A stretch of DNA of 64,000 nt, from contig OZ116702.1 in assembly GCA_964199315.1 (NCBI GenBank), positions 8,990,001 to 9,054,000 on the forward strand. The letters run 5' to 3'. Shown here piece by piece: positions 231 to 45,013 of this stretch. Below the pieces are notes generated by a model. The model searched no databases, had not been told where the DNA came from, and saw only the letters and a list, made by a program, of their open reading frames with translations. This DNA is from Orbicella franksi. Lineage: Eukaryota. The number at the start of each line of letters is the position of its first letter. Position 1 is the first letter of the stretch. The position numbers were made by a program, and so were the translations under genes.

Positions 231-3200
231 CTGATGGCATTTAAAGCATACCCACTCAAAAGAAGGCCTTCTGGAATCAATTTCATTTGTACCGGCTGCA
301 AGGTCAGCTTCAGCCTGTCTGAACCAACGCTTAGCCTCTTCAGGCTGCGGATTTCTAAGGCAGAACCTTGGAGGAATTTGACGTGATGACGATTCCAAGG
401 AAACGTCCAAATTAGCGAGTCTTTCTTTGTACTCCTCACGCCGCGTGCCATGCTCTATTGCACGTGTTACCCAAGCATCAATATATTCGTCGTAAGAGCC
501 ACCCAGTTGCGAGATTGTATTCTTGATGTGCTCAAACGCCTCTGAGCAGAATTCTTCATCTCCCAAGTTCTTCTCTGGGTGCCAACGTAGAATTAGCCGC
601 TTCACGATTTGTCGTTTTTGTTCTTCTGGTAGTCTCCATGCATCCTCCAGTTGCTCTGAAATCTCTCCAAAAATCGCCTCTTTGTTTCTGTTTCTGGGGC
701 GTTCTTTCTCCCTTTCAGATATATCTTGTATACGGTGGAATTTGTACAAGACGGCAGCATTGACCTCAATCGGTTCTTTGTCGTATCCAATGTTGATTTG
801 GTACATCTTTGTCAAGAGGATAGCATCTTCATCCATCACTTCGACCTCCTTGATAATCACAGCGTAGATGTACGTAGCGACCCCTTCCTCGAGTTGGAGA
901 CTCGGGTCATGTAGCTGATAACCCACATATTCCCCAGGTTCAAATTCCAAAAAGGCGTCATTCAGCAGATGATGCTCCTCGATTGGAATAAAGCCACCTG
1001 GCTCTGCATAAATGCCCATATCTGTTCCATCATAGGTGTCATCTCGTCGAATGCGCCTCCTATCCAGTAGAGGCCATATGTCACCAAGCGGACAATGCAA
1101 CATCTCAGGAATTAGTACCATTTTCTTTCCCAGAAGCTCACCATAAATCTCTTCAATTACCTGGGCTATCAAGGAGGCAGCGTTGCTCATTCCTGTTACA
1201 GAATTCAAATACACCTTCAACTTTTCCTTGCCAGACACCACAACTTTCTCTTGAAAGAATGGTACATCTTCCTCACTTCCGGAAATGAGTTGACCGTTGT
1301 GAAAGAGTGAGGTTTTAAGGCTTTCTACGGCACAAAGCTCTATGTTTCGAAGACCATATTCAATATCAGCGGCTATTCCTTCATCAAATTGCTTCTTCTG
1401 CGAGTCAACGTGTCGAACAATTCTGATAATGCCCTGTACAAATTGAGCAGACAAAAGCCTCGTCGTCAATGCACTGACAGCCCCACTTGTCACTATTGCA
1501 CCGTCGGTGAGTTTTTCTTTTACCACAGAGGACAGCATCACTGGTTGTAAAGGTGTAGGCAATTTCATCATTAGCTCTTCGTAGTTTGTCATGGCAGATT
1601 TTGGTCTGGCATCCAGCAGGCTAAGCTCAAGCACAAAACGTATGTTGAGCCTCGCGATCCTTGGTCCGTAAGCAGGTACATCATCGAAAACCAGCTCGGT
1701 GGACTTGTGCAAAGTCATAGGGATTTTTTTCAGAGGCTTATCAGAGGAGCGCGTTTCTGGAAACTTTGGTGGTAGGTACAGATATTCAGGAAACGTCGCT
1801 GGTAAGTACAGATTACATACTGCTGACGCTTCAACAGGATCGTCTTGAAGCCTTGCAAAGAAACCTTTCACTGCCTTGGAACACATTCTTATTTCATTTT
1901 GGTGCAATTTGTCATCCCGGCTACTTTCCTGCAACATCTCCAAAACCATGGCATAATGGGTAGCTCGAACAGCCTTGGAACAGCCCAGGTACTCAAACAA
2001 TCGCTGAAACTTGCCAAATTCGGGGGGAATTTTGTATAGATATGGCTTAATCTCAAGACTTTCGTACAACTCAAGGACTGCCTGACTGGGCAGAATGAAC
2101 CTCTTTCCTTCTTCAACTAAAATGCATGGAGTAGTTTCGAGGAGCCTTTTCGCTTCATATCCTGTGGTCGCGTTGACCTGCAGGAAGGCGTAAATACTTT
2201 CCATGACCGCCATTACCGCGGAGCGTTCTTCAAGTGAAGCAGTTTGTATCTTCCTTTTACGTTCAAAATGGATGCAAATGTTTTCGCAATGACTAACTAC
2301 AAGATTTACCGATGGCTTCTTCACAATTTGGAGCTGGGCGAGAAAAGAATTGCAGTACTGCTCGATGTTGACACCATGAGGACGATCAAATTCGTATTGA
2401 CGAGACCTTGGATCTGCCCACCCTGGAAGCAAGTGTGCTTTCGTCCATACGATGTCTTCGTAATCCTTGAAAACTGCCCCTTTGAATGCAATGAAGGGAA
2501 CTTCGCCATCCATTGTTGCGCCTAAAGCTCGACAGACTGTTAGCAGTGGTTCTGTAACAGGGTCTGCAGCTACGAAGGGAATATCACAGACCATTTGTAA
2601 AAGACCTTCACCCACTACATTGGGTCGAGAGATTAGGTGATCCACCAGAATACGTGACCTCGTGAATGTATTCTTATTTCGCTTTGTGGCAGCTTCGTGT
2701 GCAACTTCTGTAGCAAATCTTTGAAAATCATCTTTAGAAACATTCTGCACCAGGCCTATCATTTCCAAAAAGGGCAACCATTCTTCTGAAGCGAAAGGGT
2801 CTGGTGGAAACTCGTCCTCTGTTAGCATGGACTTGAAAACAGGAATTCGGGGATCACAGAAACTCGACGCAGTCATCAACGTGCCGTCCTTGTTTGGAAT
2901 GAACTTCACTGTTTTCAAATAATCTAACAGCTTTTGCCTCCCGATTTCTCTTTCATTTTTCTGTTTTGAACTTCCTGAATAATGAAATTGGCAAATATAT
3001 CTGATATGAGCCAATGTTCCTTCTTCACTGAAATACGGAAAACATTTGAAAACAAACTCGAGATACGCTTCAACAGGAGAGACACTTTCAACGTCCAAGA
3101 ATTCATAAAGATCTGACAGGCTTGAGTTGGATTTCAAAAACAAACAGTCAAGAACTGATTCCACAACATCCATCTCTTCTTCGGGTAATTCATCAGGTAT

Positions 3201-6200
3201 AATACACGATTTTCTCTCCTCGAGTTTTGCAAGACCACCTCTTGCTGTGGGGTAAAATGGCAGCTTCCTCAAGATTTCTTTGTCAACATCTGTGAGACTT
3301 TGCACGTTCCGGTTAAAGTACTCTAGGACAACTGTTGCATGTGAGGGCTGTAATTTCCCCTCAAGGGAAAGAGGATCCGTTTCTAGAGCCTGTTTGAGTG
3401 CTGTAAGAAGGGACTTTGGTGTCTTGAGAGAGGCTACGAGATTACGTACGAACTGGTACGAATCTGGTTTGGTGTAAGGTGTGGTAAGCAAGTATATTGT
3501 TGTAATTACTACTGAATTAACCTTTGGTAAGCCCAAAGATCCTACAATAGTAGCCAGATTCCGATCTGAGATACCACAGTCAGAAAAGTCAAGAACAGTT
3601 TCAGCCATACAAAGCGGCACCAAGAAATGATCTGTCAATATTCGTTTGTTCACAACAGTCTTTGAAGAAAAAGATGTGGAGGATCTTTCCACGTGGATCG
3701 TTTTCGTTGCGGGAAGAAGGCACCATTTAGATAGTGGCGAAAGCAGCGTACGAATGAATTCTTCTTTACAGTCCTCAGTTATCTCTGCTTTAGTCATTGC
3801 ATCGTTGACAAACTCTTGCAAGAAGCTCCAAACCCTATAGATCCACTGGTGATTAGGCAAGGTGGCAGATGGGTCATCTGGGCACCATTTCACATAGTGA
3901 TCTTCGCTTATGTAGCTGTATGGTAGGGTTTGGTGTAACAACGAAGCGAACATTTGTACATCCAAAGGTCGAAAAACGGGGTACTTTACGCATTCGGGGC
4001 TGCTAAAAATGTCGCTACGTACTTCTCTGTGAACAAAAATGGACGGGGAACATCGAAAAATATTTTGGTAGCGACTCAGACATCGGGGATTACTTTCGCT
4101 AAAAGCATTCAAGTTGTTGTCCTCAGTAAGAAGCAGTGGAAGTCCAGAGAGACTCTTCAAAAAATGGTCGTCGTCTTTGCAGTACTTGAGGACACGGATC
4201 ACTCCTTGTTCGTTTTTGAATGGTGTCTTGTTCACAGGGCATGGAATCTTCCCAACATTGCAAAGCGGATCAGGATCACCAAACGATTTGTAGAAATTCA
4301 TAACTGCAGTGGGTGAAACACAAACCACCTCCACTTCTGCCTTCTTGAGTGACTCGAAAGTGGTCATTGAAAATACGACAAGTTTTAAACCAGTCTCGAG
4401 CAAGATTTCTTCAAATTTGGACTTCCGCCTGATTCTTCCTTCTTCTCTTTTTATTCTTTTTTCTTTCTCTTCTTTGCTTTCAAGGCCACATTTTCGGGGT
4501 GTGGCAGCAAAACAGCCTTTTATTTCGAGATTGTTAAAGTAGATTTTATCTTTTCCGGTACCTGACAGTGGAAACCACTCTACCTGGACTCTCTCAGAAC
4601 CGTACGATTTCTCACGGCGGTAGCTAGAATTCTCTTCCGCTTTCCTCACTAATGGGATCAAGCGCATCTTCTTTTTGCTCATCATTTGGTAGACTACCTC
4701 AACCAATGTCTTCCAGTACGTATCCTCTATGGGTAACCTTGGAAAGAGCTCCTCATATGTACTTAACTTTCGTAAAGTCGTACTTCTGCAGTTACTGCGA
4801 GATTCAGTACGAGATTCAGCACGATCCTGAACGATAGGCAAATGGAGGAAAACGCGAACTCCGTCTAGAAGGGTCAGATAGCATGACGCAATGACGTCGC
4901 GCAACAAGGCATTGTTCCAATCAGTCCTGTAGTCGCCGGTTACATCTCTCCACAAATTTCTCCTTGCCTCGTGGTCCAATGCAAAGTGCCCATTGATGTG
5001 AACTGGCAAATCTGTTTCAAGTGGAAGTGGAAGAAAGCAGTACGCTTTCTTCTTCCTATCTAGCTGCTCCCTCGAGTTTGTACTTTCCAGAAGGCACGCA
5101 ACACCACCTCGAGGAAGCATCCCCAGCTTTTGTCTCCTAAAAGCATCGACAATTCTCTTGTCCACCGCTTTCTCAAAGCCAACCTGTTGGACAATCAACC
5201 ATGTTTCCTCTCTGCCGGATGAATCTCTCAACTTCATAGTATACGTACACTTTTGGACATTTACGCTTGTGGGTAGGGAATTGTTGCTCTCTTTCACACG
5301 ATTCCCGATCCCTTTGATACAATCAGCGAATGCTTTCCTCTTTCTGTCATCATCTTCGGAGAGAAGCACTTCAACAGAGTATCTGTCCGTCAGCTTCCCT
5401 GATGATTTATCTATTCCACAAAGACTAATCTTCTTCACATTGTTAACAAAAAGGAGAATGTCGAAAAGCTCCTTCTTCAGGTCTTCCATCATCTCGTCTA
5501 ATTTCTTCACTGTTACCACAGCTGACGATATGTTAGAAGTTGGCGCCATTTCCTCCGTTCGTAGGGGAAGCCTGAACATTGTTGAATTCTGGATGGAAAA
5601 AAGATCCTCGAGATAACAAGGGAAGACATCTGGGAACTTTGTTCTCATTTTCTCTATGTCTTTATACATTCTGCCAGGTTCTTTATCGGTTGCATTCGGG
5701 ACATACTTGCAATGTGGGTCGAATACACACAACACATCTCCAATTTCTTTACCCCTTGACATGAATGAGGGCACATCAGTCAAGTGGTAGACAGCATTGA
5801 ATCCGACACCATATTGGCCAGTCTTGTTTGGATCATCGCCCTTACTACCCTCGCCAAGGGTCTGTATTCCTTTGATATCTGCATTAGTGAAAGGTTTGTT
5901 GTTGTATACACACAATGCCGGACCTTGCAGTGGTTTCCAGCTTTCTTTCAACACTCTTTCATCAGGATGGTATCTTGGGTCCTTTATGAAACAAATTTCC
6001 GTTGCTCGCGCATCATCTGCATTTTGAAGAAGTTCTTTCAAGATGTCCTTCTCACATGGGTAACCTGTAAGAATCCGTTTCAGACGAGTTGTGAGTTTCT
6101 CTCGTTGTCCACAGGGAAGCCCAAAGTCATGATGTTGTAGGGCTTCGTCTCTTCGTGTTTTAACACCCAAGTGAGAACATGTTGGCCACGGAATTTTCTC

Positions 6201-9200
6201 ACTGACAAATTGAATACTTTCGTCGTCATCATCATCGGATATCCAAGGGCAGTCCTTCATACAAAGTTGAGATACTGGTCGCATTACTCTCCTACAGGAA
6301 GGAAGATAAATAGATCCCCATTTATCAGGTATTTTTGAACAATCGCCAGTTGACCGTTCGAGTATCTCCCCTAGTTGAATCGCCATGTGGACTGTCACTT
6401 CAAGAGTTTCCTCATCAAGTTGCCTGTCATGGAAATGTCGCTCTACCCGTTGAAGACTTGAGATGAAATCTTTCTCCTCAAACTTCTCTTTCACGCCAGC
6501 AAGTTTCATGATATCGGAACAGGAATCGGCAAGATGTTCTGGAAGCTTATAAAGGTACGGAGAGCAGTCTGCGTTAATTTCCAGGGCCACCTGGTCTGCA
6601 GGGAGAAATCTCTTCCCTGCAAGAATGAACTTCTTGTCAACTAAAAATTGCATGATCTCAGGGCTGTGACTGCTCATCATTTCCTGCAGAAAGGAATACG
6701 CCTCAGTGCAAACACGGTTGACTTCATCATAACCTTCGCGATCCAATGAATCGATGTCAGTGCATATTGCTTCTTCAAGCTGGCTCATTATATGCTGGAT
6801 GCTGACTTCTTTGTTTCTCAACTTCAACAATTCTGTCACCTTTTTGGGGATTTCCAGGTCAACAAGGGGCTCCGTGCAACATACAAGATACTTCTTTTCC
6901 TTCAGGAATACAACTTTTGGTGCGACCAGAAGATTTCTTCTGCTTTGAAATTCGTCTCCTTTCCAGGGAAGGGGAAAGTGCTCTGGTTTTCGAAGAACTG
7001 GGAGAAATTTAGCCTCTACAAGGCGTGTCATAATGGGTTCTGTAGGACCTTTACCCTTGCCTTTCATTTTCTTTTGAATAAATGAGAGCAACACCTTTAC
7101 ACGCTTGACTGCCGCTTTGCTGTCAACTGCATTTATCCTGTCGATACTCTCTGCTCTCTCCGCAATCTCCTTCCAAGGAAGAACATCTGACACCATTCCA
7201 AGCTGTTCAAGTTTGGTTAGTCGTTGACGGTTAAGAAAGGTTTCGTCAGTTCCACAAGGAAATTTGCCATCGTCAGGGCAGAATAGAGTGGATACTTCTG
7301 TGTTTGGATTTACAAGTTGGCTAGGACACTTCAGACTTTTGCCACGGGGTGATGCTGGAATACTGGCATGCGTCTTTATCAGTTCATCTAGATCTCTAAT
7401 GTTGTTATCCAAAACATGCAGCACCAATACATCTCTCAGGTCTGAACGAACTTTCAGAATGTTTGGAAAGAAAATCTGATGGAAAAAACGTCTCTTGTCG
7501 TACGTTCTAGTCTGAATTATTTCCCACAGACCACAATCGTGAAAAGACTGGAACACGTCTGCTGGCAAATCGATTACCACTTCGTCTTCTTTAGCCAACG
7601 TCTGAAGCACGGCAAATGAAGTGTCACCTATTTGAGGCTCCAAGCGAAACCTTGGATCGAGAAACACTACATGACGTATGTCAACCCATTTACGTCCATC
7701 TGCGGAGAATAGGGCATGATCTCCAACGGCAAGTTGTTCATAGAAGGACTGCAGGACAGGCCAACAGTCTCTATGTACTTCATCCGCCTTTGGCCATAAT
7801 GAATGGCACTTATAAGAGCCGTCATCTGGAACAATTGACTTGATGTCTTCAAGAAGAGAAAAATAGGCAGACAAAATGGAGTCTTGCATAAGTACTTTGT
7901 TCCAGTCGAAGCCATGGCATCTCTTGTCGTCTTCAACTTTCGACTGTAAGTGACGTCTGTTAGCAGCTAATGCGAAAGCTCCATTAATGTGCAATGGTAG
8001 GCCACTATGGATTGGAAGTGGAAGATAGCAGAAGATGACACCATTATGCGTTGGTTCATCCCCATCAACTTTAGCAGGCAATGGCAAAAATGTATTATTT
8101 CCAGTTGGTACCAAACGAACAGCTGCTCCACCTGATGGAAGGAGACTTTCGTCGGTTTCCACAAACTGCATTGCTGAACCATTGCCCATTGCAGAAACCA
8201 CGAGCCACGTGAAACGCTCATGACCAAGACACCCGAAACCGTTAAAGAACTTCAAGCCCAGTGTAGTAAAACGACAATCGATATCAACTACTATGGAACA
8301 TTCAGGGAATTTACTTGGATGGACAGTGTGGTATCTTGCCTCCCTCGCTACCTTCGATGACGCTTGAAGAAAGCAACATCGCCTCAGGAAACGCTGCTCT
8401 CCAGCATCCAGTTTCTTTGCAGTAACTGGTAATGTCACCGGGAAAGACAATTCTCGAAGAATTCCTTCCTGGGACATTGATTTGGAGACCTGAAACATCA
8501 AAGCAGGCAGAGACTCTTGACTTGTTTTTCTTGGCAAACTGTAGATTTCCACACGCAGAACATTTTGTGTAAAAAGAAGCAGAGACCTCGACCTATGAAT
8601 GAGCATTTGTAGCAACTCTCGTATTTCGCGGTCGTCGTAGTTCAGCTTCTTAATCTCACTTCCCAGGGCTTGCTCTCGAGTCCTCAACGGAAATCGAAAA
8701 AGCGTTCCATTAAATGAGTTGTCTTCCTTGCTCAAATGCAAATCGCAGCCAAAGATGCCGTTAAATGGTTTGAATTGATTTGCGAATTTGCAAAGCCTCT
8801 TCACATCTTTGTTGAGATTGATCTTCATCCCTGGCTTCCTTTTGTTCCTGATGGCCTTCCCGAGGTATGACGTGTGAGGATCAAAAATGACAAAATAGTT
8901 CCTACTTAAGATCATGGGCACATCTGTCAAATTGTACACCGCATTGAAGCCAAGTCCAAACCTACCAATCTTTTCGGTATCGTGCTCTTTTGTTGCTTCG
9001 TTGAGTTTTGCAATGTTCTCAAAATCTTTATCTCTGAATTCAGCGTCGTTATAGACCCACAAAGCAGGACCTTGACAACCTTTCATGCCTTCGTCAATCA
9101 AGCAAGTCATGGCATCCTCGTTCATTCTTTCATCATAGAGAAATCTGACTTCAGTGGCACCGGCATCGTCTGCGTTTTGCACAAGCTCTTTTAGAACTGA

Positions 9201-11440
9201 AAATCCATCCGTGTACTCCTCCAGAAGTCGGTTCAGTCGAGTAGTAAGCCTCTCTTCCTGTCCAAACTCTTCTCCTATGTACAGCTCATCCGCGTCCAGA
9301 ATTCTATTGGTGAGGCTTCGAACACCAAGGCGTTCGGCTGTACTGTTAGGGACATTGGGGTGTACATAAAAATAGTCCATGCCTTCATCGTCACCTTCTC
9401 TCTTCAACCAATCGTGGTCGCAGTACATACAGCACTCCACTGGCTCAAGCCTTACATGTGAGTTGTCGTCAGTGTGTGTTGGTAGAACAATTTGCCTTTT
9501 TAGCTCTTCTGTCAACTGCCCACTTGCCAACTCATTCACAATGTTGACGGATAACTGAAGATCTTGCTTTACTTCCAAAGCGCTGGACAGGACAATTCCA
9601 TCATCATACTTCTCTTTAATCATGTGAAGGACCTCTACCAGAACAGCTGGATTACTGCTTTCCCTCATGCCAAAACGGTAAAACAGCTCAGCGTACTTAG
9701 CCATGTCGCTAGGAAGAAAATGTATGTAGGGTGTAAGATCAATGTGTGGCTTGCTGAAAAGCACATGGCTAGGTGAGGAAAAGCCATCTCCATTCCACAC
9801 CCAATCAAATTCTTCAAAACAGTCAAATGCCCGATCCTTATCAACGTCCTTTGCTGGCACCCGACTTAGCAGCAAGTAAATTTCGTTTACCACAACCATA
9901 AAGAGCGGTTTTTCTTCTTTTGAATACGATCTGATCACATTCTGCAAATGCTGAATGACCTGGAAGACACCGGGTGGGTACTGCCAGCCAAAATACTTGG
10001 AAACTTGACCGGATGGCTGTACTTCCACAAGAGGCATAACCGTTCCAATAAGGTTCGCAAGGGACTGACTTCTCACTTCAGTTGGCTTGAAAAAGTGTTT
10101 GCCATTTTCTTCGCCCTCTTCAAACCATGCCAGTCCCGGAGGATAGTTAGGGGGCCTTTTTCGCAATCTTGAAACCCAGGGAATGTCCTTCAGTAAGGCT
10201 CCTAACGGTTGTCCATTGAGTGACTCCAACAAGTTTTGGGGATTTTCACTGAGGAACTGCAAAATTGCCCTCGATTTCCGTTCTGCAGTTGGAAGGTGAG
10301 TAAGCCCACTTACCAATTTGGCACTTTGGTACAAATCGTATCCAGCGATGCTGTCCTCGTTTTTCATTCCAAGTTCCTCTAACATGGCGAGTACAGAACG
10401 TTCGGCGTATTTGACTGTGGGGAAGACATCTTCGTCGACAAATATTTTCTTGAGGACCATGTTTCTGGGATCAAAGAGGTCTGATGCTCTTCCGCGCCCC
10501 CGATGTTTGGAGACAAAGGGCAAGGCTTGTAATTTCTGTTTGAAAGAGCCATTTTTGCGAATTTCATAAGTGTGGTTTTCCAGTACATAAGTCATGAGTT
10601 GGTCAATCTGCTCTCCAGTGTACTTTCCTCGCTGTATGTCTGGAAACACCATTTGGCAGAGTAACTCAGTTGGCGTTAGAATCTTGACGTCTAAAAGAAC
10701 TGCTATAGTCTTGGAATCGTGCTCGGTAATGTCAATCAGCTCTCGCAGAGGTGGAACCGGAAGAGAATCAGCAACCGTTGCACAAAGAACCTCCTCCTTT
10801 GATACGAACTTCTTGGACAGCGTCTGGAAAATGGGAAGCGAACACAGAAGATTGTACTCCGCTTGTCCCACAGATGACCGTCTCACACGGGCCAGAAATG
10901 ACCTGAGGAGGTGCTTGTCGTTGGTAGATAACATCGTGCACACGATTTCTGAAAACCTTCCAGCTGCTGCCATCTGGCTAGAGGAACACGCCATTGCTTG
11001 CAAAACGCCTTGTACAGAAGGTGAATGTACAAACGTCCCCAAGACAGCGGGATGGTGTCTTAAATAGGCGGGAAAATCATTCATGATGATTAAACCAAGC
11101 TTCCTTAAAACATTCGTCAGTGAATCGTCTAGGCAATCATAACTTAGGGATTTGACAACAACTTTTGAAGGGCTGCAAAGTCGAACCAAGGTTACAGGCG
11201 TTTGTGTCATGTCTAGTGGAATCAGAGGTAGTTTTCCAAGTCTCTGAATATCTTCCTCTGTGGTGAAATGTTCTTGAAGATATCTCCAGACAACCTTGAT
11301 CCAGTCTCTTGGAGGATGGTTGTGATTACTGTCATCGGGGTACCACGGAACGGTATTACCCCTACTCCACTCAGGCGGTAGGGCCTCGCAAAGAAGAGAT
11401 GGTACATCTTCCTCGCACAATAGCCGTAATTGCGTATCTT
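231..11440 (-). CDS. SACS: Giant 11.2-kb exon of sacsin copy 1
   Basis: Within ORF 207..11567. Acceptor tttgtttgacag ends at 11441, donor at 230; phase 1 joins the exon ending 11738 (DQ-E-DTQL). Confidence 0.93.
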
Positions 11441-16482: not shown

Positions 16483-16677
16483 GAGTGAGAGTTCAGATTT
16501 TCTTCAAATAGCTACTTGCTCTTTTTCACCTGGTAACCATCTAAACAAGACCACAAGAAAAGGTTGATTAGCAATGAATAGGAAATGCAAGAACGGCATT
16601 TGCAAAATTAGCGCGCTTTGGAGCCATATTAAATATCCAAGCACTGCATATTTAAAAGCTGCGTAAATAGGGTGTTA

Positions 16678-19927: not shown

Positions 19928-20371
19928 ACGGGGCTTAAGAGCGTGGCACTATGAAATCATACATAACACAGATTTCACCTCCTCGCAAACGATGGGCGAA
20001 ACTACAATCAAAACGAGTTTCAAGTAGCTATGCTCGTTCTTTCGTTTAGTTCAAAACATTACATGTAAATAAAGAGCGTTTTCATGGCGCCCTGGTTGCT
20101 ATTCTGAAACAATGGGAAATGTTTGCATGAGAAAATAACACCATGCAACATGCTAAATATAGCTGCCGTGACATCAGGCTCAACTCCGCAATTTTAATTC
20201 AGCGCTGTTTTGAACTGGCCATTGATAAAATGAATTAGTTAAATGAATCCCCCAACGTCATTTAGCAATCGAATGAAATAATTCCACCCATTGCATGCTT
20301 ATTGAACAAATGATATTAAAATATTGATTCGACTTGTGGCAGCCAATGCCGGAAGACCGTCCCAGTGATAA

Positions 20372-31600: not shown

Positions 31601-34600
31601 ATTATCCAATCTGACGAATCAAATGGTTCCGAGGGGAAATCGTTGTCGGAGAGCATGCTTCCGAAAACATCGATACCAGGGTCGTAAAAGCAAGACGCGG
31701 TTTGTAGAGTGCCCTCTTCTGTGGGAAGGAGAGGAGTATTTCTTAAGCAGTCCAATACCCTTTGTTGTTCGCCATCCTCTTTGACGAAATCTGACAAAAT
31801 GGATTTACGGATGTATTCCAGGTGACTCTTTCTTGCGTCCTCACTTAGAATGGAGAAATTTTTCAGAATGAAGGTACAATACACGTCCACAGTGGAGACA
31901 CATTCGAGCGCCAGAAAATCGAACAACCCGGAGAGACTCTGCCAGGATTCCACAAATACAACTCTAAGCTCACGCTCCAACACGTCTATTTCCTTTCGTG
32001 GTATGCCAGTGGGAAGGACACACACTCTAGCGTCATCGAGACTTACAAAGCCTCCATGTGTTGCCAAGTAAAAAGGAAGCTTCCTGAGAGTGCTCCGATC
32101 TGTATCTTGCAAGCATCCCGCACTTCTACTGAAGTACTCTAAGATTATTCTACAATCTGACTGCTCCAATCTTTGAGTAACTGAGTTAAAGTCTGAAGAC
32201 ATCTTATGGTCAAGAGATATAAGAAGTGAAGCGGGATCTTTTAGGGACGATACCACCATTCCGGCTAAAGTAACTGAGTTTGACCGCGAGTACACAGATG
32301 TACCTGAGCTCGAGGCCGAAAGTACAGCACAATTAAGTTCAGGCAGACCAAGTTTACGCAAGACATCCACGAGTTTCAGACTTGCGGAATCTGGATTCTT
32401 AAAATCAAGGACAGACGCTGCATGTTTCAAGGGCGCAAGAAGATGCTCAGAATTTGGGACTGATCTCCAGGAGGAAAGCCAGTGGGTATTTTTTTCTTGC
32501 CTGCTCCTTGTCACGGTAACAGGGAGAATACTCCAGTTAAAGAGAGGTCCAAGAGCAGCTTTTATCTGAAGGACTTTACAACCCTCATCTAGGTTTGCAT
32601 CGCTGAGAACATCTCTTACAAGGTCGTAAAGGAAATTCCACAATCTGAATATCCATTGTTGATTGGGTATTGCTTTCTGATCTGGAGCCCACTTAACAAA
32701 CACGGCCTGTCCGTACATTTTGCGTGATAATGTTCGAGGCAAGTTGGCGGCGAAAACTTGCGCATCCAAGGGCTTCAAGACGGACGAGGTCAAGGTTGTA
32801 ACACCAGAGAAAATATTCCTGTCGACTACCTCATGAAGAAAAATGTGGGGAGAACAAGGCAAAAGATCGTGATATCGAGAAAAGATCTTAGGCTGTCTGC
32901 TTGAGAACAGTTGAAGACGTTTGTCTTGTGTAAGAAGCAATGGGAGATCCGGTAGCTTGTCGAGAAAATTTTCCGCCTCTTTGCAGTACAGCAGCACAAC
33001 TGTTACTCCAAAAGCACTTTCGAATACTGTGTTATTGACTTCACAGGGAACCGGTCCGATCGTACATAAGGGGTCTTGAGATTTGAACGTTCTGTAAAAA
33101 TCGACCATAGAACTAGGAGAAACGCAGAAAGTGGCAACATTAGATCGCTGAAATGATTCGTGTACTGCCAGGGAAAAGGCCACAAGGTTGAAACCACTTT
33201 CAAGAAGTATCACCTCAAACCGCTTTCTAAGTGTCTTTCCCTTGTCATATGTTTCCTCGAGAGATGACGTGCTAAAGGGTCCCTTTTCTGCAAGGTTGTT
33301 GAAGAATGCTTGGTGTCTTCCAGTGCCAGTTGGCGGAAGCCACGTCACACTAACCACGGTAGCACCTTTCTGGGTCTTCTTAGTTACATCCACTGTTCTG
33401 ATTCTAACTACTGGTAGAATTTGTAATTTTTTCCTATTCAATTCTTGAAAAACAGAATCGACCAGAGTCTTCCAATACTCCTCTGTGGTAGGTTGTAGTG
33501 GGAAAATAGTTTCATACGCATTAATCTTCTGGCAAATCTCACTTTCGGTATAAGCGGTTTCACCTGTAGTCACGGGAAGTTTAAGAAACGTCCGCACTTC
33601 ATCCAGCAGCCTAACGTAGCACGATGCTACGACATCCTGGAGTAAAGCATTGTTCCAGTCACTCCGATATCCGCCATGGCCACCTTCATCTCTCCATAAA
33701 TTTCTCCTTGCCTCATGGTCCAGCGCAAAGTGTCCGTTAATGTGAACTGGCAGGTTGGTTTCGAATGGTAGTGGCAGAAAGCAGTAAACTTTCTTTCTTC
33801 TTTGCGCAAGATCTCTTGAATTTCTCTTTTCCAAAAGGCAGGCCACACCACCACGTGGAAGCATCCTAAGCTGATGTGCCTTAAAGGCATCAACGATACT
33901 CTTTTTTACAGACTTCTCAAAGCCGATTTGTTGGACAATTAGCCATTTTTCCCGGTTACCAAGATTGTCAGCAATGTTCAAGACATAGGAAACTTTTTTC
34001 ACCGACACCTGACTAGTAAGAACCTCCCTCCTTTCATTTGCCATTTGACCAATCTTCTTGACGTAAGCAGAAAATTCTTGTCTCTTAGAGTCATCCTCCT
34101 TGGACATGGTTGCTTCAGCTGTGTAAACGTTCACCAACTTCTCGCCTGTTCCATCGACTTCACAGAGTTTTATCTTCTTTACATTGTTTACAAAGAGAAG
34201 GACTTCAAATAACTCCTCCTTCAGCTCTTCCATCATTTCATCTAGTTTTCCCAGAGACACAGAACCTGATGATATCTTGGATTCCCGAGCCATTTCCTCT
34301 GTTCTTAAGGGGAACCTAAACACGGTTGCGTTGTCTCTCGGAAAATGTTTTCCTAAATAGCAAGGGAAAACATCTGGGAAATCTCTCTGCAGGGTTGGGC
34401 TTACTATAAACTTCCTGCCAGGCTCTTGCGGACTTGCACCAGGAGCGTACTTGCAATTTGGGTCGAATACACACAAAACATCCCCAATGTCGTCTCCTTT
34501 CGAAACGAACGACGGTGCATCTGTCAAGTGGTAGACGGCATTGAAACCAACGCCATACTGGCCAGTCTTCTTCGGATCATCTCCCTTACTTCCTTCTCCA

Positions 34601-37600: not shown

Positions 37601-40481
37601 TCCCCGAGGTGCGACATGTGAGGGTCAAAAACCACAAAATAGTTCCTGCTTAAAAACATAGGTACATCTGTCAAATTGTAGACTGCATTGAAACCAAGTC
37701 CGAACTTTCCAATCTTTTCAGTGTCGTGCTCTTTTGTCGCGCCGCTCAATTTTTCTATGTTCACAAAATCCTCATCTCTGAATGCAGCGTTGTTGTAAAC
37801 CCACAGTGCACGGCCCTGGCAGTCTCTCATTCCTTCGTCAAATAGATAGTTCATGGCATCTTCGTTCGTTCTTTCATCATATAGAAATCTGATTTCAGTG
37901 GCACCAGCATCATCTGCATTTTGAACAAGCTCTTTCAGAACTGAAAATCCATCTGTGTAGTCATCCAGAAGCCGCTTAAGTCGAGTCGTGAGAGGCTCAT
38001 GCTGCCCAAACTCTTCTCCTATAGAACGCCTAGACAGCCTTCTTCTAGTGAAGGCCGTTGAGGTTGCGGCTTTAGTCGATTTTTTCATCATCGCCTTCTT
38101 TCTTCAAGCCAAGTTCACAATACGATCACCTGGTTACAACAAAAACGTACTTGTAATTGCCCTTTGAATATATAGTCATATTTTTCTATATCAAAATACC
38201 TGTATGATTATTATATTATTTTTATGATAGAGGGCCTCTCTCGATAGTTGAGAACTGACCAAAATTTCAACTGTCAGCTGATTTTTTAACTGATAACTGA
38301 GATCTGTAAGGTCTACTGGTGGCTGAGAAATAAGCTGACATAGCTGATAGCTCAGAAATTATCGAAAGTATATCTCCGTAACTGAAGTTTCAGCATTGCC
38401 ATCAAGAACATAAAATGCCCTGAACATGAAACACCCCAAAACTTGCCCAAACCCAAGAGAACGTTTGTTTAAAGCGGGGTCTACTTGTTTTAATTCTAGA
38501 GGGGAGATGCATTTTTCATAGCATCTCACTTGGTTAGTTTTTATTGGTCTTCTTAATACTGCTTTCAACAATATTACATCCCGTTAATAAACCTGATGTA
38601 CAAGTCTTCCTCTTCAAGAGGGATGTTAAAATTGCAAGCGGTGGAAAATAGCTCAGAATCTAATTTCCCTACAAGATTTTCATACACCATATCCCAACAA
38701 CTTAGCCTGAGTATCCGGCTTTTCCAAAGTACTGGGAAGGGGGAGGAATAAAAAGGAAAAGAAAAAGGAAGAAAAGCGTGACGCAAGGACATTTTAAATC
38801 TGAGGGCTTCCGACCCATCACAGCATGACACGCGTCTTCGCAGAAAGTAAACGATCAAAATCATATCAGGTCTTGGGCATAATTCGAAGATGTTCTGTGA
38901 AACTACAAAAATAAAATCTTTGCGAAGTACTTGGCCGCGGGTTTGACCTTTGGCGCACATCGCTTTTCTTCCTTCTCCTCCCCCCTCACCTCTCCCGTTA
39001 CGAAGGCCTGATACTCAGGCTACCGAAAACTGAAAAATACGTGCATGGCTCATGATCACGCCAAGAGTTTCTTTCTGTCAAGGGATACTATATTTCAGTT
39101 ATTTACGCTGTAAAAGGACTGATACGTACTCGTGTTCAGCAATACGTCAAATCGTGTTAAACTCTACCCCAGAATTGAACCGACCTAAAATACAAAAATT
39201 ACAATTATAATCTTTTGAAAATTACAACGATAATTTATTAAAATAACAACGATAATTCATTAAAATTACAACTATAATTTATCAAAATATTAAAATCATA
39301 ACGATAACAATGGCGCACTATTTTTGATAAGTGCTTGGTGTGTTAGGCTTTGTTACGACAACGAAGTTTAAATAATATATAAAAATTCATTTGAATTAGC
39401 ATATCAGACAACGCTGTGTATTTTGTAGCATTTTCAAACATCAAGAGAAAAGTCGAAAATGCGATTCGAATAGATCATTTTTAATGTCAGACATTCAGCT
39501 GTGTTTGGCTATATCTCCTCAATCCAAAATTACTCTAAAAAGCATATGGAGAAATAAAAATTCTACTCGTCTGGGTGGCATTCATATAAATGGGTTGTCA
39601 ACAAGTATAAGAGGGTTTTTGGATGGAAAACCCGAAACCATAGATAATCTCTTTTGGCTCTTCTTGCCTACAGGGTTCTCTCAAATGACCGACCGAGTTC
39701 AGCATGAACATTTGAAAAGCCTTTCAAAAATTAATTGCACATTCCATTACGTTACACAATTTTTGCGCATCCGAAGTGATGTTCAAATTATCATTATTTT
39801 GCATAGTTGTCCTTATTGTTGTCATTCAGGATTAGTGAACTGTGTTACAGCAAAACTACTAAAACCTTAAACGGAAACAGTGTAACTTAAGAACATTTAA
39901 GGCTCGATATTGGCAAACATTTAAAACGTTCAGCTTCAGTCCGAAAATTTGACGTTCTTACAACATCCCATGCGTTAGACAGAATGTAGATCCGGCATTT
40001 TGGAAAGGCGTCTGCATAACCTAAGCATAGGCAGAAAACTCCCGAAAATGCCATTTCAGAAAGGCTTCCGTATATCAACGGTTAGGTATAGCTACTGGCT
40101 CTCGTTAAACTACTGTTTCCAAGGTTATAAACTAATGCTGTAATCTCCCTGCATCCCTTCACTCTCAGTCTTTACTTATCTTGCATGTTTTTCAAGTTAT
40201 CTTTTGAGGTAGTTAATTTCTTCACAAATGAGTGTCCATGTGATAGTCTCGGCAATTTTGCCTGTAATCACTTATTTTTCCAGACATTTTCAAAAGCACA
40301 AACTATTTGACCAGCATTCATTACCATACATGAGGTAAAACGTTAAAGGAAAATCTATTACAGTGAAAACAAAGGCAGTATCTTAGGAACTGAGTTCGAA
40401 TTTAAAGGTAGGTGTACATGGAATGTTACGGAAGAACGATTCCAAAGTTAGTATACAGCTCGCATATATATACCTACCCAT
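28409..40481 (-). CDS. SACS: Sacsin-like protein, copy 2 (two SRRs only, J-domain, HEPN), about 3,100 aa
   Basis: Preferred model: 40481-40478 (ATG G, homologous to the copy 1 start exon), 38018-28993, 28690-28409 = 9,312 nt, 3,103 aa starting MGEEFGQHEPLTTRL. Alternative start at ATG 38091 (MMKKST.., 3,126 aa). Colinear with copy 1 from SRR2 to HEPN. Confidence 0.9.
28993..38018 (-). CDS. SACS: Giant 9-kb exon of sacsin copy 2 (SRR2, SRR3, J-domain, HEPN start)
   Basis: Within ORF 28957..38091. Donor GTAAAA at 28992 follows CHQ, the same position as in copy 1. The 5' boundary is uncertain (acceptor before 38018 or 38129). Confidence 0.9.
31264..31341 (-). repeat. Coding microsatellite (GAG)10 plus GTG/GAG run in sacsin copy 2
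   Basis: Encodes EEVVVVMEDEVVIMLEEEEEEEEEE; absent at the aligned site of copy 1. Confidence 0.9.
38703..39022. mobile_element. MITE with TAGCCTGAGTATC termini
   Basis: TAGCCTGAGTATC at 38703-38715 and its reverse complement GATACTCAGGCTA at 39010-39022. Confidence 0.75.
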
Positions 40482-43147
40482 GAGCATGCCAGATTCGCCA
40501 AAAATAGCTCCCTGTTCCTCCTTCACCTGGTTATAATCTAAATGAGGCAACAATTAATCGAAAGGGATTACCATTGATTACAAAAGAAATGTAGAAAAGT
40601 TGTATCAGGAAAAATCAGCACACTTTGGAACCCGGAGTGAATATCCAAACTTTGTCAAGCTACGCAAATATTCCGCGACAAATTCAAGATGTTTCTAGGA
40701 CACTTGCTGTAGACAATACTAATTTAAATTTCTACGGATCGTGTACACGCATCATAGGTAACTCAAGCATACTACGTACATATATTCAGTTGCATATTAA
40801 TGACATTTTGAAAATGCAAGACTTCTGGTAATTTAGAACTGGCACTTTCTGCGGATAAATAAACGTTGTGTTTCTAGGTATTCTGGGCGATTTTTGGTTA
40901 ATATATCCTATAATGTTGTATATTTCCAAAAGACAGAAGAATTATTCGTTTTAGAACAACAATATGGTTACCGTGAAGGCTCATCTCAGAAATTTTAATT
41001 CACCACTGTTTTGAACAAGCCATTGTCGTGAGTTCGTTAATGAATCAACCGAGTTTTCTCATATCAGCTAGTCATCGCATGAAGTATTTTCATTCATTGC
41101 ATAGCACCGTGCTTGCATTTGTACACATATGGTGTTAAAATACTGAAGCGAATCCTGACACTGAACAAATATGTCTTCCACAACGGTCTTGGCAAGGCCG
41201 ACCGAGAATTAAAGAACTTTCCCAAACAAGAGTGTGTACAAAAGCATACAAAGCACTGTGTAATCACAATAAAATTTCGTTTTACCTTGAAAGTCGAGAA
41301 TGTAGCCGCGAACTTTTAGGTGCTTTCCTCCTAGTACGGGGAAAACGTTCAATTAAGCTTCCCGTTCACTCCGGAAGTTCTTCTTATCTTGTTCCGCGTT
41401 CAAATCCTACTAACTACAGATATAAAAACTTAGAGTTCTGACTCCTTGTAACACCTACACGTAGTTATAAATAAACAGACTTTTTCAAAGTATCATTGAA
41501 GATTCTAGGAAATTCTGTTGTAGTTTCCTGTTATGTCCTTCCGACAAAACAAGTTCATTTGCATGACAATTGTATGTTGAGGTAGCTTGAGTAAATTAAT
41601 TGAAGTTTCTATGGCCAAGCAAGCGTAATGTTTTGACGTTGCGATAATAAAGATATCTAATGCCTCAATGCTCTGACAGGATTAGAATTTGTAAGAATTA
41701 TTTATTCATTTTAATGTTAAGCAATCTCTCACCGTCAAAATCCACCTGGCTTGCTTTTCGAAAAGTATAACAAGATTCTTGCAGTTCGATAAAAGACGTC
41801 TACAAATCTCTTTTATGCTGCCGCCAACATCCACAACGATTTTTAAAGAATTATATACCTCAAAATAGTCGCACTCATAGCAAATGACCCGAATAAAAAA
41901 ACCCTTGTATATGTTGCATTACTCAGCGCTCTGCTACAAGGTATCTGAGGTACTACCGTTAACAATTACCTACAGAAATTTCACTGCACTTGTTAACAAT
42001 CTTTCCCTTACGGTGTCACTAAATAAAATATTTCAGCGGAATAACATGCTTCTTGATGCTTTCAACATAATAAGAATGAACTTTCAAAAGCTGATCAGAC
42101 TTGTTTCAAAACTGAAATCTTTTTTGTTTTATCTGAGGTGCTTCCTAACGCCTTCAACTAATATTTATACAGTATAATGAAGAACAAGACATAAGCTTTT
42201 CTTGTAAATCAACAAAAAAAGATGGAGTTTGTGGTCATTTGCAGTAGCATTTAGATGGCAAATCGCAGAAAGTATAAAAACATTTCAGCAACTTTTCTTT
42301 TTTATCATTCAGCTGATTGCCGTGACTCGATCTGCGGCATTGGAGTCGATCGACCAGTTGAAAGTTTGACGCAAACATGTATCAGTGGCAGCTTTAAGTT
42401 GTTTTTGTTTTGCCAAGAATTATTTTTGTTGCAACTATTCCCAAATACATCAACAGTTCAAACCTGACAATTTCTAAACATTAAAATGGGCCATTTGTAT
42501 ATAAACTGGAATTCATTCATGGTACTTCGGTACTTCTTCAAAGAGAAATGATGCTTGTTATACTTAAAACACGACAGCTCCGTATAATGATTTTCATTTG
42601 GCCGGAGAGTTTCAATATGTTTTCAAAACAAGAGAAGTACACGGCTTCTGGTAAATAATGGTATTTCTTTCTAAATATTCTAGGGAGGCCTGTCTGAGAC
42701 CTGCCTCGGCAAAACAACGATATTTCTGAATTTCTCTTTCGTACGATAGCTCTTTGTGGCTCCTTCTTCGACGAGAAAATAAAACTTCTGAGAATTCGAA
42801 TACAAACTAAGCGAAGCCGGGTCGGCGCAATGCTTTAGGTGCGTTTCAAAAAACGATTTCGCGCCGAAGCAAAGTATGTTTTGTCTCAGTGTATACGTTA
42901 TGCGTGTTATTAGGGTTGGTACGACGTAAACAAAGCTTGTGGGTAAACAAAGCCTAAAGCTAAGGGTCAGTTTATGAAGCATTCTTTTCTTTTCTGTTTT
43001 GCAAGTCATTCGACAGCAGGCCTCTCTTTTTCATCTTAATATAATTGTACGGCTGGAACAGTCGCAGTGTCGAAGGCACAGCGTACATGGTATGACATGT
43101 TTGATCGCAAGTGAGCGAGATGATTGAACACAAGGATATGTATGTAA

Positions 43148-44460: not shown

Positions 44461-45013
44461 GTTTCTACGATATAACATACTGAAAGATTTTCTTACCTCT
44501 TTCTTAGTTTCAAACTGCTTTTGAATCGGCGTATTCGCTTTTCACAAACCAACGAACACAGCGCAAATGTCAACAAACAGATCCCTCTCCAAGAATCCTC
44601 AACGATTCTGGGAAATGCTCTTGTAATTTCCGAAACTATCTTTCCGAGAAAAGCCAGATTAATTATCACATGTTAATTGACATGACAGCGATACGTGACG
44701 TAAGTGATTTTTACCAGGTCCCCTATGTGAGTTGCGAGTCAGGTTCATGATTCACTCTTGTACCCAGAGTCACCAGTCCTTCTGACCCGGTAAGGCCTTG
44801 GCACGAGGAAAAGGAGACCACAAGAGACTGGCCGCTCTGGAAACGAGAATTTTATCGGTCATCATATTGATGCTATTGCTGCGTGAAGTGAAAAGTGAAA
44901 AAAACTTGTACCATGCAGGTACCGTGCTTTACGTATGTATGTATGCAGCACCGGAAATAAGCAAACCTTTGTCTCCAGGTTAAGAGAGGAGGCCCCGAGG
45001 GACAATTTTTACA
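44461..45013 (-). promoter_or_regulatory. Conserved upstream block D of sacsin copy 2
   Basis: Paralogue of 22899-23449. Candidate donor AG|GTAAGA at 44496; TTCTGGGAA, TTCCGAGAA and GAAAAGTGAAA motifs. Confidence 0.65.

What the first reader, a model, noticed from the sequence alone, without database searches (positions are those of the whole stretch)
231..45013. Tandem sacsin pair with divergent architecture: candidate modular GHKL-J-HEPN stress or defence locus
Seen: two same-strand sacsin genes, one with three SRRs and one with two. Both have intact ELxQNAxDA and GxxGxGF ATP-binding motifs in every SRR, the same HEPN intron position, duplicated upstream non-coding blocks and extensive amino-acid divergence. 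Established: sacsin combines GHKL ATPase, J and HEPN domains; HEPN and GHKL domains recur in biological-conflict systems; sacsin has been reported as a balancing-selection locus in Acropora millepora. Inference: this array may be diversifying by module loss, J-domain rewiring and loop variation, as immune receptor arrays do, rather than acting as a single housekeeping co-chaperone. Copy 1 runs off the left edge, so more copies may follow.
Basis: partly seen in the sequence, partly recalled or inferred. Interest (0 to 1): 0.72.

Follow-up and report, generated by a model that had tools for sequence, protein, structure and literature searches.

The report
Two old sacsin paralogues in array
The window holds two intact giant sacsin-like chaperone genes of a stony coral, one with three ATPase modules and one with two. 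They sit at the end of a nine-gene cluster, and the shorter gene is an old, conserved hybrid of two neighbouring gene types, not a currently diversifying immune receptor.

Summary
Two minus-strand sacsin-like genes lie at 231-45013.

- **Gene A:** 8 coding exons, 4,474 aa, three SRRs. Its last HEPN exon lies 215-493 bases left of the window.
- **Gene B:** 2 coding exons, 3,126 aa, two SRRs.
- **Shared features:** every SRR keeps ELxQNAxDA and GxxGxGF. Both genes have the HEPN intron after ...CHQ. Both J domains read HPE, not HPD.

The context changes the reading.

- **Cluster:** the pair is the right end of a 9-gene cluster (18 giant sacsin ORFs genome-wide). It includes a 98.8% twin of A and copies with in-frame stops.
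- **Age of B:** the two-SRR form is one old clade, with orthologues at 57-81% identity in other corals. B's locus is collinear in the one orthologous contig aligned.
- **Hybrid origin:** B's first ~2,150 residues group with the G4/G5 paralogue type and its last ~850 with the A type (AU p 3e-5 and 6e-4).
- **5' end:** RNA contigs show three non-coding 5' exons. The ancestral ATG now opens a 15-codon uORF.
- **Selection:** dN/dS is 0.30-0.39, and no window is significantly above 1.

A stress or defence role remains an inference from literature and from Tiamat homology. Neighbouring windows of this scan had already noted this array.

The parts
231..11440 (-). Gene A giant exon: end of SRR1, SRR2, SRR3, J domain (WHPEKN) and the first third of HEPN
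   Evidence: ORF; Pfam SACS; AG/GT boundaries and an uninterrupted frame; J/HEPN alignment
11738..12315 (-). Gene A coding exon 6 (SRR1 solenoid part)
   Evidence: tblastn with Montipora capricornis XP_068735038 (P0140), 75% identity; AG/GT boundaries
12832..13825 (-). Gene A coding exon 5 (C-terminal half of the SRR1 ATPase domain onward)
   Evidence: Pfam SACS profile 112-245, E 7.8e-26; 88% identity to P0140; splice sites
14633..14780 (-). Gene A coding exon 4 (holds GRFGLGF of SRR1)
15413..15523 (-). Gene A coding exon 3 (holds ELIQNAEDA of SRR1)
15866..15966 (-). Gene A coding exon 2 (residues 2-35, ANNDDDGF...). There is no ubiquitin-like domain before SRR1
   Evidence: 97% identity to P0140 residues 2-35
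16479..16540 (-). Gene A start exon. The ATG at 16480-16482 is followed by one base and then the GT donor
   Evidence: Alignment with the start exons of G5, G6 and G7; the junction gives M-A-N as in the Montipora protein
20156..23449 (-). Gene A upstream conserved blocks. They include a likely non-coding exon 1 (21384-21472, ending CAAG|GTAA) and a distal block (22948-23449)
   Evidence: blastn against B's upstream region and other array members. The role as exon 1 or promoter is inferred by analogy with B
28409..28690 (-). Gene B terminal exon: HEPN profile 34-115, contains RMRYPD, includes the stop codon
   Evidence: HEPN hit at C5:9018424-9018690; AG acceptor; match to human sacsin HEPN 3O10; 86% conserved in orthologous locus L021
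28993..38133 (-). Gene B giant exon. About 42 nt of 5'UTR, start codon at 38089-38091, then two SRRs, J domain (WHPEKN) and the first third of HEPN
   Evidence: ORF; Pfam; the RNA contig runs unbroken over 37401-38133 and is joined to upstream exons; the same start (MK[KR]S...) occurs in seven orthologue groups. The exact acceptor is uncertain by a few bases
31506..31656 (-). Approximate ancient recombination breakpoint in gene B. Upstream coding sequence is G4/G5-like (clade IIb); downstream is A-like (clade I)
   Evidence: Sliding identity switches between residues 2150 and 2200 of the stop-to-stop frame; partitioned trees and AU tests
39131..39184 (-). Gene B non-coding exon 3. It carries the stop of the 15-codon uORF and lies in ~1 kb that is absent from the orthologous locus
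   Evidence: Joints in RNA contigs of runs X1 and X15; sequence; absence from L021
40478..40537 (-). Gene B non-coding exon 2. It is homologous to the start exon of three-SRR copies, and its ATG now opens only a uORF
   Evidence: Joints 40537>41286 and 39182/4>40476/8; alignment with other start exons; reading frame worked out
41286..41641 (-). Gene B non-coding exon 1 (at least this long), ending CAAG|GTAA
   Evidence: RNA contig pieces in X1 and X15; conserved donor in five array members
44489..45013 (-). Gene B distal upstream conserved block (possible regulatory region)
   Evidence: 67% identity to 22948-23449 and to blocks upstream of other copies; 73% conserved in L021

Best explanation
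[quoted passage not shown] They form the right end of a large tandem cluster in a stony coral genome.

**Lineages.** A and B belong to lineages that split long ago. Each has relatives at 57-89% identity in other coral genomes. A is a full three-SRR gene of clade I. B belongs to a conserved two-SRR lineage that arose once.

**Origin of B.** A G4/G5-type (clade IIb) gene lost its SRR1 exons and the first ~2.3 kb of the giant exon. It gained a new acceptor and start codon in the old SRR1-SRR2 linker. It also received its last ~850 codons, including the J-HEPN module with HPE, from an A-type neighbour. Unequal crossing-over or gene conversion inside the array is the likely cause. The ancestral start exon survives as a 5'UTR exon whose ATG opens a 15-codon uORF.

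**After that event.** Both genes have been kept by purifying selection, strongest on the ATPase cores. The surrounding array keeps duplicating and losing copies.

**Mechanism (inferred, not shown).** The proteins probably work like sacsin. That means ATP-driven Hsp90-like modules acting on clients, and HEPN-mediated dimerisation with nucleotide or RNA binding. The J domain's HPE triad would tune rather than abolish Hsp70 coupling. A stress- or infection-responsive role is plausible from the family's expansion and from published expression data in other aquatic animals. It was not tested here.
For: - **Gene models:** both have no internal stop and all GT-AG introns. SACS, J and HEPN homology is shown.
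- **Cluster:** 18 giant ORFs genome-wide, 9 on C5 8.50-9.03 Mb. The split HEPN is shared by the non-canonical genes, while four C4 genes have an uninterrupted HEPN. Copies, in-frame stops and a 98.8% duplicate over 23 kb appear.
- **Two-SRR clade:** 8 representatives form one clade with support 100. All start MK(K/R)S... at the same place.
- **Mosaic:** residues 30-1900 group with IIb (SH-aLRT 99.9), and joining them to clade I is rejected (AU p 2.7e-5). Residues 2300-3040 nest beside A/G7/P0091 (support 99), and joining them to IIb is rejected (AU p 5.9e-4). The identity switch lies at residues ~2150-2200. HPE and the HEPN-N signature follow the C-terminal tree.
- **RNA:** spliced contigs in two runs from separate studies join 41286|40537, 40478|39184 and 39131|~38133. 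A's exon words are held at 0.62-0.78 in RNA assemblies of several studies.
- **Selection (dN/dS):** A-G6 0.33, A-G7 0.39, G4-G5 0.30, B-orthologue 0.32. In the B-orthologue comparison the ATPase-core windows are 0.10-0.25. No significant window above 1.
- **Synteny:** B's locus is collinear with L021 from window 46958 to 20186. Two-SRR and three-SRR genes lie on the same strand of one contig in two other assemblies.
- **HPE:** it occurs in about 1% of J domains and is read as fine-tuning (PMC10410713).
Against: - The clade groups for the AU tests were named after the first tree was seen. The models were LG+G4 with a short search.
- The species behind most database proteins are unnamed, so the age of the two-SRR clade rests on branch lengths. 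B to P0013 is 0.81, against 0.90 for G5 to Porites and 0.41 for G5 to Oculina.
- The RNA evidence for B consists of assembled contigs. The raw-read runs gave no reads on the gene.
- The last 5'UTR junction is non-canonical as aligned (one extra base). The acceptor is therefore uncertain by a few bases.
- A's expression cannot be told apart from that of its 98.8% twin.
- Mean dN/dS of 0.3-0.4 is fairly relaxed and does not exclude site-level positive selection.
- No functional or induction data were produced here.
Confidence: 0.75

Rival explanations
1. The array is an immune-receptor-like defence system that is currently diversifying through module loss, J-domain rewiring and loop variation. 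A and B would be functionally distinct sensors or effectors induced by stress or infection.
For: - Large lineage-specific expansion with birth and death.
- SRRs match the antiphage Tiamat (TmtA) models at E 5e-53 and 9e-65. Two 2026 preprints place sacsin in a Tiamat/NOV clade.
- Sacsin multigene families are induced by poly(I:C) and OsHV-1 in oyster and by nodavirus in fish.
- HEPN domains recur in conflict systems.
- dN/dS outside the ATPase cores reaches 0.5-0.9.
Against: - Module loss and the J-HEPN swap are single ancient events kept in all orthologues.
- B's locus is collinear with its orthologous locus in another species.
- No window has dN/dS significantly above 1.
- The Tiamat match stops before the nuclease part.
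- No induction data exist for this locus.
- GAS- and HSE-like motifs are at chance frequency in the window.
Confidence: 0.15
2. Plain housekeeping subfunctionalisation. A and B are ordinary co-chaperone paralogues that divide the ancestral sacsin job, for example by tissue or compartment. The array is just a neutral by-product of tandem duplication.
For: - Purifying selection on both genes, intact catalytic motifs and conserved orthologues and synteny.
- Transcripts appear in many unrelated RNA data sets.
- Four canonical-type sacsin genes also exist.
Against: - Eighteen copies of a 3,000-4,500 aa gene, with recent duplicates retained at dN/dS 0.33, is unusual for a housekeeping chaperone.
- Relatives are repeatedly virus-responsive in other aquatic animals.
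Confidence: 0.3
3. Part of the array picture is an assembly artefact. The 98.8% A/G6 duplicate could be two haplotypes laid in tandem, and the in-frame stops in G4 and G7 could be consensus errors.
For: - The 1.2% divergence is what I would expect for coral heterozygosity. That figure is from my own knowledge and was not checked here.
- The best DNA runs hold only 0.75-0.83 of A's words, against 0.92-0.96 for B's region.
- The published A. millepora sacsin reference needed four indel corrections.
Against: - The 264-kb stretch has no N. The two copies lie 72.5 kb apart on the same contig, and after their shared ~33 kb they continue into different sequence.
- The differences between A and G6 are 27 synonymous and 32 non-synonymous, as for real coding divergence.
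- This rival does not touch the A/B pair itself.
Confidence: 0.15

Closest known systems
Human/vertebrate sacsin (SACS; structures 1IUR J domain, 3O10 HEPN)
   Same: - Repeated SRR supradomains with an Hsp90-like GHKL ATPase (PF25794).
- A C-terminal J domain (E 1.2e-8 to 1IUR) and HEPN (E 6.5e-6 and 1.7e-3 to 3O10).
- A giant exon. Gene A has three SRRs, as human sacsin does.
   Different: - No N-terminal ubiquitin-like domain, and no XPCB hit.
- The J-domain triad is HPE, not HPD.
- HEPN is split by an intron.
- Gene B has only two SRRs.
- There are eighteen paralogues. From my own knowledge, not checked here, vertebrate SACS is a single gene.
Sacsin-like gene of Acropora millepora/digitifera with two ancient haplogroups (bioRxiv 10.1101/867754; PMC8626496)
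   Same: A coral sacsin-like gene with Hsp90-like, J and HEPN domains and few exons. One orthologue of B (P0124) carries a deeply divergent ~1.5-kb segment between the last ATPase domain and the J domain. That resembles the published position of the diversity peak.
   Different: The published gene is described as single-copy, with three exons, on A. millepora chromosome 7. Its published primers have no match in the window or at any sacsin locus of this genome. Orthology is not shown.
Virus-responsive sacsin/sacsin-like multigene families of oysters and fishes (PMC7064767, PMC8875540)
   Same: An expanded sacsin family in an aquatic animal.
   Different: Those reports rest on expression data. 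Induction was not tested here, and the architecture of those genes was not compared.
Tiamat (TmtA) antiphage ATPase-nuclease and plant NO VEIN (bioRxiv 10.64898/2026.09.30.754977 and ...755639)
   Same: The ATPase plus the adjacent region of each SRR matches TmtA profiles (E down to 9e-65, profile positions ~8-520).
   Different: There is no PD-(D/E)xK nuclease. The repeats are multiplied and end in J and HEPN domains.

Membership tests
Sacsin family | Sacsin repeating region with an Hsp90-like GHKL ATPase (Pfam PF25794) and intact ATP-binding motifs | tested here: met
   PF25794 at E 1e-157 to 1e-162 and E 8e-26 for A's SRR1 exon. ELxQNAxDA and GxxGxGF are present in all 3 + 2 SRRs.
Sacsin family | Three SRRs in tandem | tested here: met
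   Met for gene A (three SRRs). Not met for gene B: it has two SRRs, no SRR1 remnant upstream, and its start codon lies in the old SRR1-SRR2 linker.
Sacsin family | C-terminal J domain with an HPD triad | tested here: not met
   The J-domain fold is recognised (1IUR E 1.2e-8; Pfam DnaJ only E 0.06 for A). The triad is HPE in both A and B. G4 and G5 in the same array keep HPD.
Sacsin family | C-terminal HEPN domain | tested here: met
   PF05168 profile 1-34 lies at the end of the giant exon and 34-115 in the terminal exon. There are matches to human sacsin HEPN 3O10. The motif region reads RMRYPD (Rx4D), so a canonical Rx4-6H is not present there.
Sacsin family | N-terminal ubiquitin-like domain and XPCB domain (vertebrate sacsin) | tested here: not met
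   A's protein starts 35 residues before the first ATPase motif. The Pfam scans of the exons and giant ORFs listed no ubiquitin or XPC-binding hit. The Tiamat preprint reports the same for aquatic homologues.
Tiamat (TmtA) antiphage system | Tiamat-type GHKL ATPase with its adjacent region | tested here: met
   PADLOC TmtA models match at E 4.7e-53 (SRR 'a') and 9.1e-65 (SRR 'b'), covering profile positions 8-403 and 11-521 of 1,370.
Tiamat (TmtA) antiphage system | C-terminal PD-(D/E)xK (NOV_C) nuclease | tested here: not met
   The TmtA match ends at about profile position 520 of 1,370. No nuclease family appears in the Pfam scans.
Diversifying immune-receptor-like gene arrays | Tandem array with birth-and-death turnover | tested here: met
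   Nine clustered genes, a 98.8% duplicate, copies with in-frame stops and an SRR1-only fragment.
Diversifying immune-receptor-like gene arrays | Positive (diversifying) selection on part of the protein | tested here: not met
   Pairwise dN/dS is 0.30-0.39. No 150-codon window exceeds 1. The best 40-codon window has p = 0.03 among 280 tested. Site models on many sequences were not possible.
Diversifying immune-receptor-like gene arrays | Induction by infection or stress | not tested
   Only presence in RNA assemblies was seen. No treatment contrasts were available.

The most novel reading that the evidence does not exclude
The tandem sacsin cluster would be a coral stress or antiviral effector system that generates new architectures by exchanging modules between neighbouring paralogues. 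Gene B's lineage, a two-SRR hybrid with an A-type J-HEPN tail, would be a fixed product of that process. The deeply divergent 1.5-kb segment in one B orthologue lies just upstream of the old breakpoint. It would be a second, still segregating product of the same kind, the sort of event that underlies the 'ancient balanced haplogroups' reported for Acropora sacsin.
Probability: 0.15. Interest if true: 0.7.

Novelty: new variant of a known kind. Interest (0 to 1): 0.45.

Why it matters
Sacsin is repeatedly named in coral heat-tolerance and population-genomic studies and in invertebrate and fish antiviral transcriptomes. It is usually treated as one gene.

In this coral it is an 18-member family. 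One cluster has nine genes, near-identical recent copies and pseudogene-like copies. That complicates read mapping, diversity scans and expression counts for 'sacsin'.

The conserved two-SRR hybrid shows that whole SRR and J-HEPN modules can be removed or exchanged and the product kept for a long time. This gives a natural experiment on what each module contributes. The HPE/HPD split between array members gives another, on Hsp70 coupling.

It does not, as it stands, show an immune-receptor-like arms race.

Tried and rejected
1. **Fetching the whole cluster and the other nine paralogues.** Only C5:8790001-9054000 was analysed as DNA.
RNA contigs instead join a 5'UTR exon to about 38133, upstream of the conserved in-exon ATG. 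The exon-2 ATG runs into a stop in exon 3.
3. **Raw RNA reads.** Run X22 gave no reads. Run X24 gave reads only on a repeat at 43.0-43.4 kb. Strand, transcription start and expression level are therefore unknown.
4. **SRR1 remnants upstream of B.** None found at E <= 0.01.
5. **Positive-selection windows.** None significant.
6. **Link to the published Acropora locus.** The forward primer has 0 matches in the genome at up to 2 mismatches. The reverse primer hits are scattered, and none is at a sacsin locus.
7. **GAS and HSE motif enrichment.** 35 against 30.4 expected, and 38 against 30.9 expected. Only local conserved pairs remain.
8. **Species identity.** Not resolved. The nearest named proteins are from Montipora capricornis. 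NEK8 is 87% identical, and the sacsin-like protein's N-terminal part is 75-100% identical to A.
9. **Gene B as a decaying truncated copy.** Rejected. It has an intact frame, dN/dS of 0.32 against its orthologue, spliced RNA and seven orthologue groups of the same length.
Full report
**1. What is in the window**

The window is C5:8990001-9054000 of a 497-Mb assembly. It contains no N.

Two very long minus-strand ORFs dominate it: 207-11567 (3,786 aa) and 28957-38091 (3,044 aa). Each matches the Pfam sacsin domain PF25794 twice, at E 9.5e-162 and 6.8e-157. Each ends with the first 34 positions of the HEPN profile. The two align over 3,063 columns at 54% identity, with A 764-3784 against B 24-3038.

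To the right lies a NEK8 orthologue: a kinase exon at 56620-57984 and RCC1 exons up to 62757.

**2. Gene A**

I used the Montipora capricornis sacsin-like protein XP_068735038 (P0140, named) as a guide. tblastn found six upstream coding pieces.

With splice sites placed, all introns are GT-AG. The model is:
- a start exon at 16479-16540 (ATG at 16480-16482);
- exons at 15866-15966, 15413-15523, 14633-14780, 12832-13825 and 11738-12315;
- the giant exon at 231-11440;
- a terminal HEPN exon at C5:8989507-8989785, which is 215-493 bases left of the window.

The coding sequence is 13,425 nt, giving 4,474 aa with no internal stop.

All three SRRs keep ELxQNAxDA and GxxGxGF. The protein begins 35 residues before the first ATPase motif, so there is no ubiquitin-like domain.

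**3. Gene B**

tblastn found no SRR1-like sequence upstream of B's giant ORF.

RNA contigs from two runs of different studies (X1 and X15) give these joints: 41286|40537, 40476-8|39182-4 and 39131|~38133. The contig then runs unbroken over 37401-38133. B therefore has three non-coding 5' exons: at least 41286-41641, then 40478-40537, then 39131-39184. Its giant exon starts about 42 nt upstream of the ATG at 38089-38091.

Exon 2 is the homologue of the start exon of the three-SRR copies, which read ...CTCATGG|GT. In B, its ATG runs through exon 3 into a TGA after 15 codons. It is now a uORF.

The in-exon start is supported by seven orthologue groups. All begin MK(K/R)S... at the same aligned position.

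The last 5'UTR junction is odd as aligned: one extra base, and ends that are not GT-AG. The acceptor is therefore uncertain by a few bases.

With the terminal exon at 28409-28690, B encodes 3,126 aa with two SRRs, both with intact motifs.

**4. J and HEPN**

Both C-termini match the solved sacsin J domain 1IUR (E 1.2e-8) and the sacsin HEPN 3O10. The J triad is HPE where mammalian sacsin has HPD.

Across 41 relatives the triad is distributed as follows:
- HPD in the G4/G5 clade, in the outgroup and in one Oculina clade-I protein;
- HPE, or HPK in two proteins, in the rest of clade I and most of the two-SRR clade; three deep two-SRR representatives gave no match to the search pattern.

HPE occurs in about 1% of J domains and has been read as fine-tuning of Hsp70 stimulation (PMC10410713).

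The HEPN intron after ...CHQ is not special to this pair. The genome-wide scan shows the same break at profile position 34 in the non-canonical sacsin genes. Four genes on C4 have an uninterrupted HEPN inside 4,270-4,360-aa ORFs.

The HEPN motif region reads RMRYPD in A, B and G5. It is an Rx4D variant, of the kind listed for HEPN-T in PMC3710099.

**5. The pair is the end of a large cluster**

The genome has 18 pairs of SRR2/SRR3 hits in giant ORFs. Nine lie on C5 between 8.50 and 9.03 Mb: two on the plus strand and seven on the minus strand.

In those 264 kb all six genes are on the minus strand:
- G4, with two in-frame stops;
- G5;
- G6;
- G7, with one in-frame stop, as note s1-225401 said;
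- A;
- B.

G6 and its surroundings are 98.8% identical to A over 23 kb, at 72.5 kb distance. G7 is 93% identical to A over 12 kb. An SRR1-only fragment lies between G6 and G7.

They include the 5'UTR exons.

**6. Age of the two-SRR form**

A database search with B found proteins of 3,005-3,070 aa at 81, 72, 64 and 57-58% identity. It also found many 3,640-4,450-aa three-SRR relatives, including named Oculina, Porites and Montipora proteins.

In a tree of 41 sequences, the eight two-SRR representatives form one clade with support 100. A, G6 and G7 fall in another clade (I), and G4 and G5 in a third (IIb).

Path lengths inside the two-SRR clade (B to P0013, 0.81) are comparable to those from G5 to the named Porites (0.90) and Oculina (0.41) proteins. 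The SRR loss therefore looks as old as the split of major coral lineages.

The orthologous locus L021 (B orthologue P0124) is collinear with the window from 46958 down to 20186. That span runs from upstream of B into the upstream blocks of the next gene.

In two other assemblies a two-SRR gene and a three-SRR gene lie on the same strand of one contig.

**7. B is a mosaic**

The J triad and the HEPN N-terminal signature of B resemble clade I, although the whole-length tree puts B beside IIb. Partitioned trees confirm a conflict.
- Residues 30-1900 place the two-SRR clade with IIb (SH-aLRT 99.9). Joining it to clade I costs 67 log-likelihood units (AU p 2.7e-5).
- Residues 2300-3040 place it inside clade I, next to A/G7/P0091 (support 99). 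Joining it to IIb costs 56 units (AU p 5.9e-4).

Sliding identity switches sharply between residues 2150 and 2200, which is window 31506-31656.

Within this genome alone the identities are:

| B residues | B to G5 | B to A |
|---|---|---|
| 30-2150 | 64% | 53% |
| 2200-3040 | 52% | 60% |

In the C-terminal tree the two-SRR clade nests within clade I. The donor was therefore an A-type gene and the recipient a IIb-type gene. All eight representatives share the pattern, so the event was single and old.

Two caveats apply. The groups were defined after the first tree, and the models were simple.

**8. Selection**

| Pair | dS | dN/dS (Nei-Gojobori) |
|---|---|---|
| A-G6 | 0.011 | 0.33 |
| A-G7 | 0.13 | 0.39 |
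| G4-G5 | 0.19 | 0.30 |
| B-orthologue | 0.30 | 0.32 |

In 150-codon windows of the B-orthologue comparison, the ATPase cores run at 0.10-0.25 and the solenoid and linker parts at 0.4-0.9. No window exceeds 1 in any pair. Among 40-codon windows the best p is 0.03 of 280 tested.

The picture is purifying selection of moderate strength, with no detectable diversifying patch at this resolution.

**9. Links to defence**

Both SRRs of B match the PADLOC Tiamat (TmtA) profiles (E 4.7e-53 and 9.1e-65). The match covers only the ATPase and the adjacent region. This agrees with two 2026 preprints that place sacsin in a Tiamat/NOV clade.

Sacsin multigene families are induced by poly(I:C) and herpesvirus in oysters, and sacsin is a recurrent virus-responsive gene in fishes.

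None of this was tested for this locus.

The Acropora balancing-selection gene was described as single-copy with three exons. Its primers find no sacsin locus here.

**10. Verdict**

There is a dynamic array, and modules were lost and exchanged. But the A/B difference is an old, conserved product of that process and not ongoing receptor-like diversification.

Function remains inferred. I commit to a sacsin-type ATP-driven chaperone machine with a tuned J domain and a HEPN dimerisation and nucleotide-binding module. I put a stress- or infection-responsive role at roughly 40%.

The array had already been noted by the scan on neighbouring windows (s1-225326, s1-196348).

Noticed in passing
window 56620-62757 (+): This is a NEK8 orthologue: a kinase exon followed by RCC1-repeat exons, 87% identical to Montipora capricornis Nek8-like. 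NEK8-like proteins P0172 and P0174 come from contigs of the same lengths (1,725,481 and 2,438,055 nt) as those carrying sacsin-like P0030/P0097 and P0092/P0095. NEK8 and sacsin-array synteny may therefore be conserved.
   Followed up: partly
L021 (orthologue of B, P0124), matching window ~31580-33140: A ~1.5-kb coding segment just upstream of the old breakpoint is as far from B (dS 0.66-0.95) as a more distant species is, while the flanks have dS 0.1-0.3. In a tree of this segment P0124 falls outside two species groups that it joins in the flanks. P0002 and P0012 keep the B-like version. It is either a deep alternative haplotype or a conversion from an unsampled paralogue.
   Followed up: partly
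L001-L020 (C5:8790001-8990000): G6 (C5:8917660-8929026) is a 98.8% twin of A over 23 kb. G7 has one in-frame stop between ORFs of 3,136 and 635 aa. G4 has two in-frame stops, and its HEPN motif reads GMRYPD where A, B and G5 have RMRYPD. An SRR1-only fragment lies at C5:8945-8947 kb.
   Followed up: partly
window 38020-38091 (-): B's first ~25 residues are basic and Ser/Thr-rich, with no acidic residue. All two-SRR orthologues share this character. It could be a targeting presequence. No predictor was available.
   Followed up: no
window 22167-22241 / 41484-41569 and 22948-23449 / 44489-45013: The conserved upstream blocks carry HSE/GAS-like palindromes: a perfect GAAnnTTCnnGAA at 22182, TTCCTAGAA at 41503, and paired TTCnnnGAA at 23046+23087 and 44606+44642. 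Window-wide counts are at chance. The 41503 site lies inside B's transcribed exon 1.
   Followed up: partly
window 43001-43400: A high-copy repeat with inverted copies (43147-43218 and 43481-43554) has a summed depth of hundreds to thousands in RNA contigs, with many loose ends.
   Followed up: no
window 38204-39195: About 1 kb is present here but absent from the orthologous locus L021. It supplies B's third 5'UTR exon (39131-39184). The exon may have come from an insertion.
   Followed up: no
window 45423-46958: This stretch is 82-85% conserved with L021, upstream of B. It has higher G+C but no Pfam hit for its ORFs. It could be an unrecognised exon set or a regulatory region.
   Followed up: no
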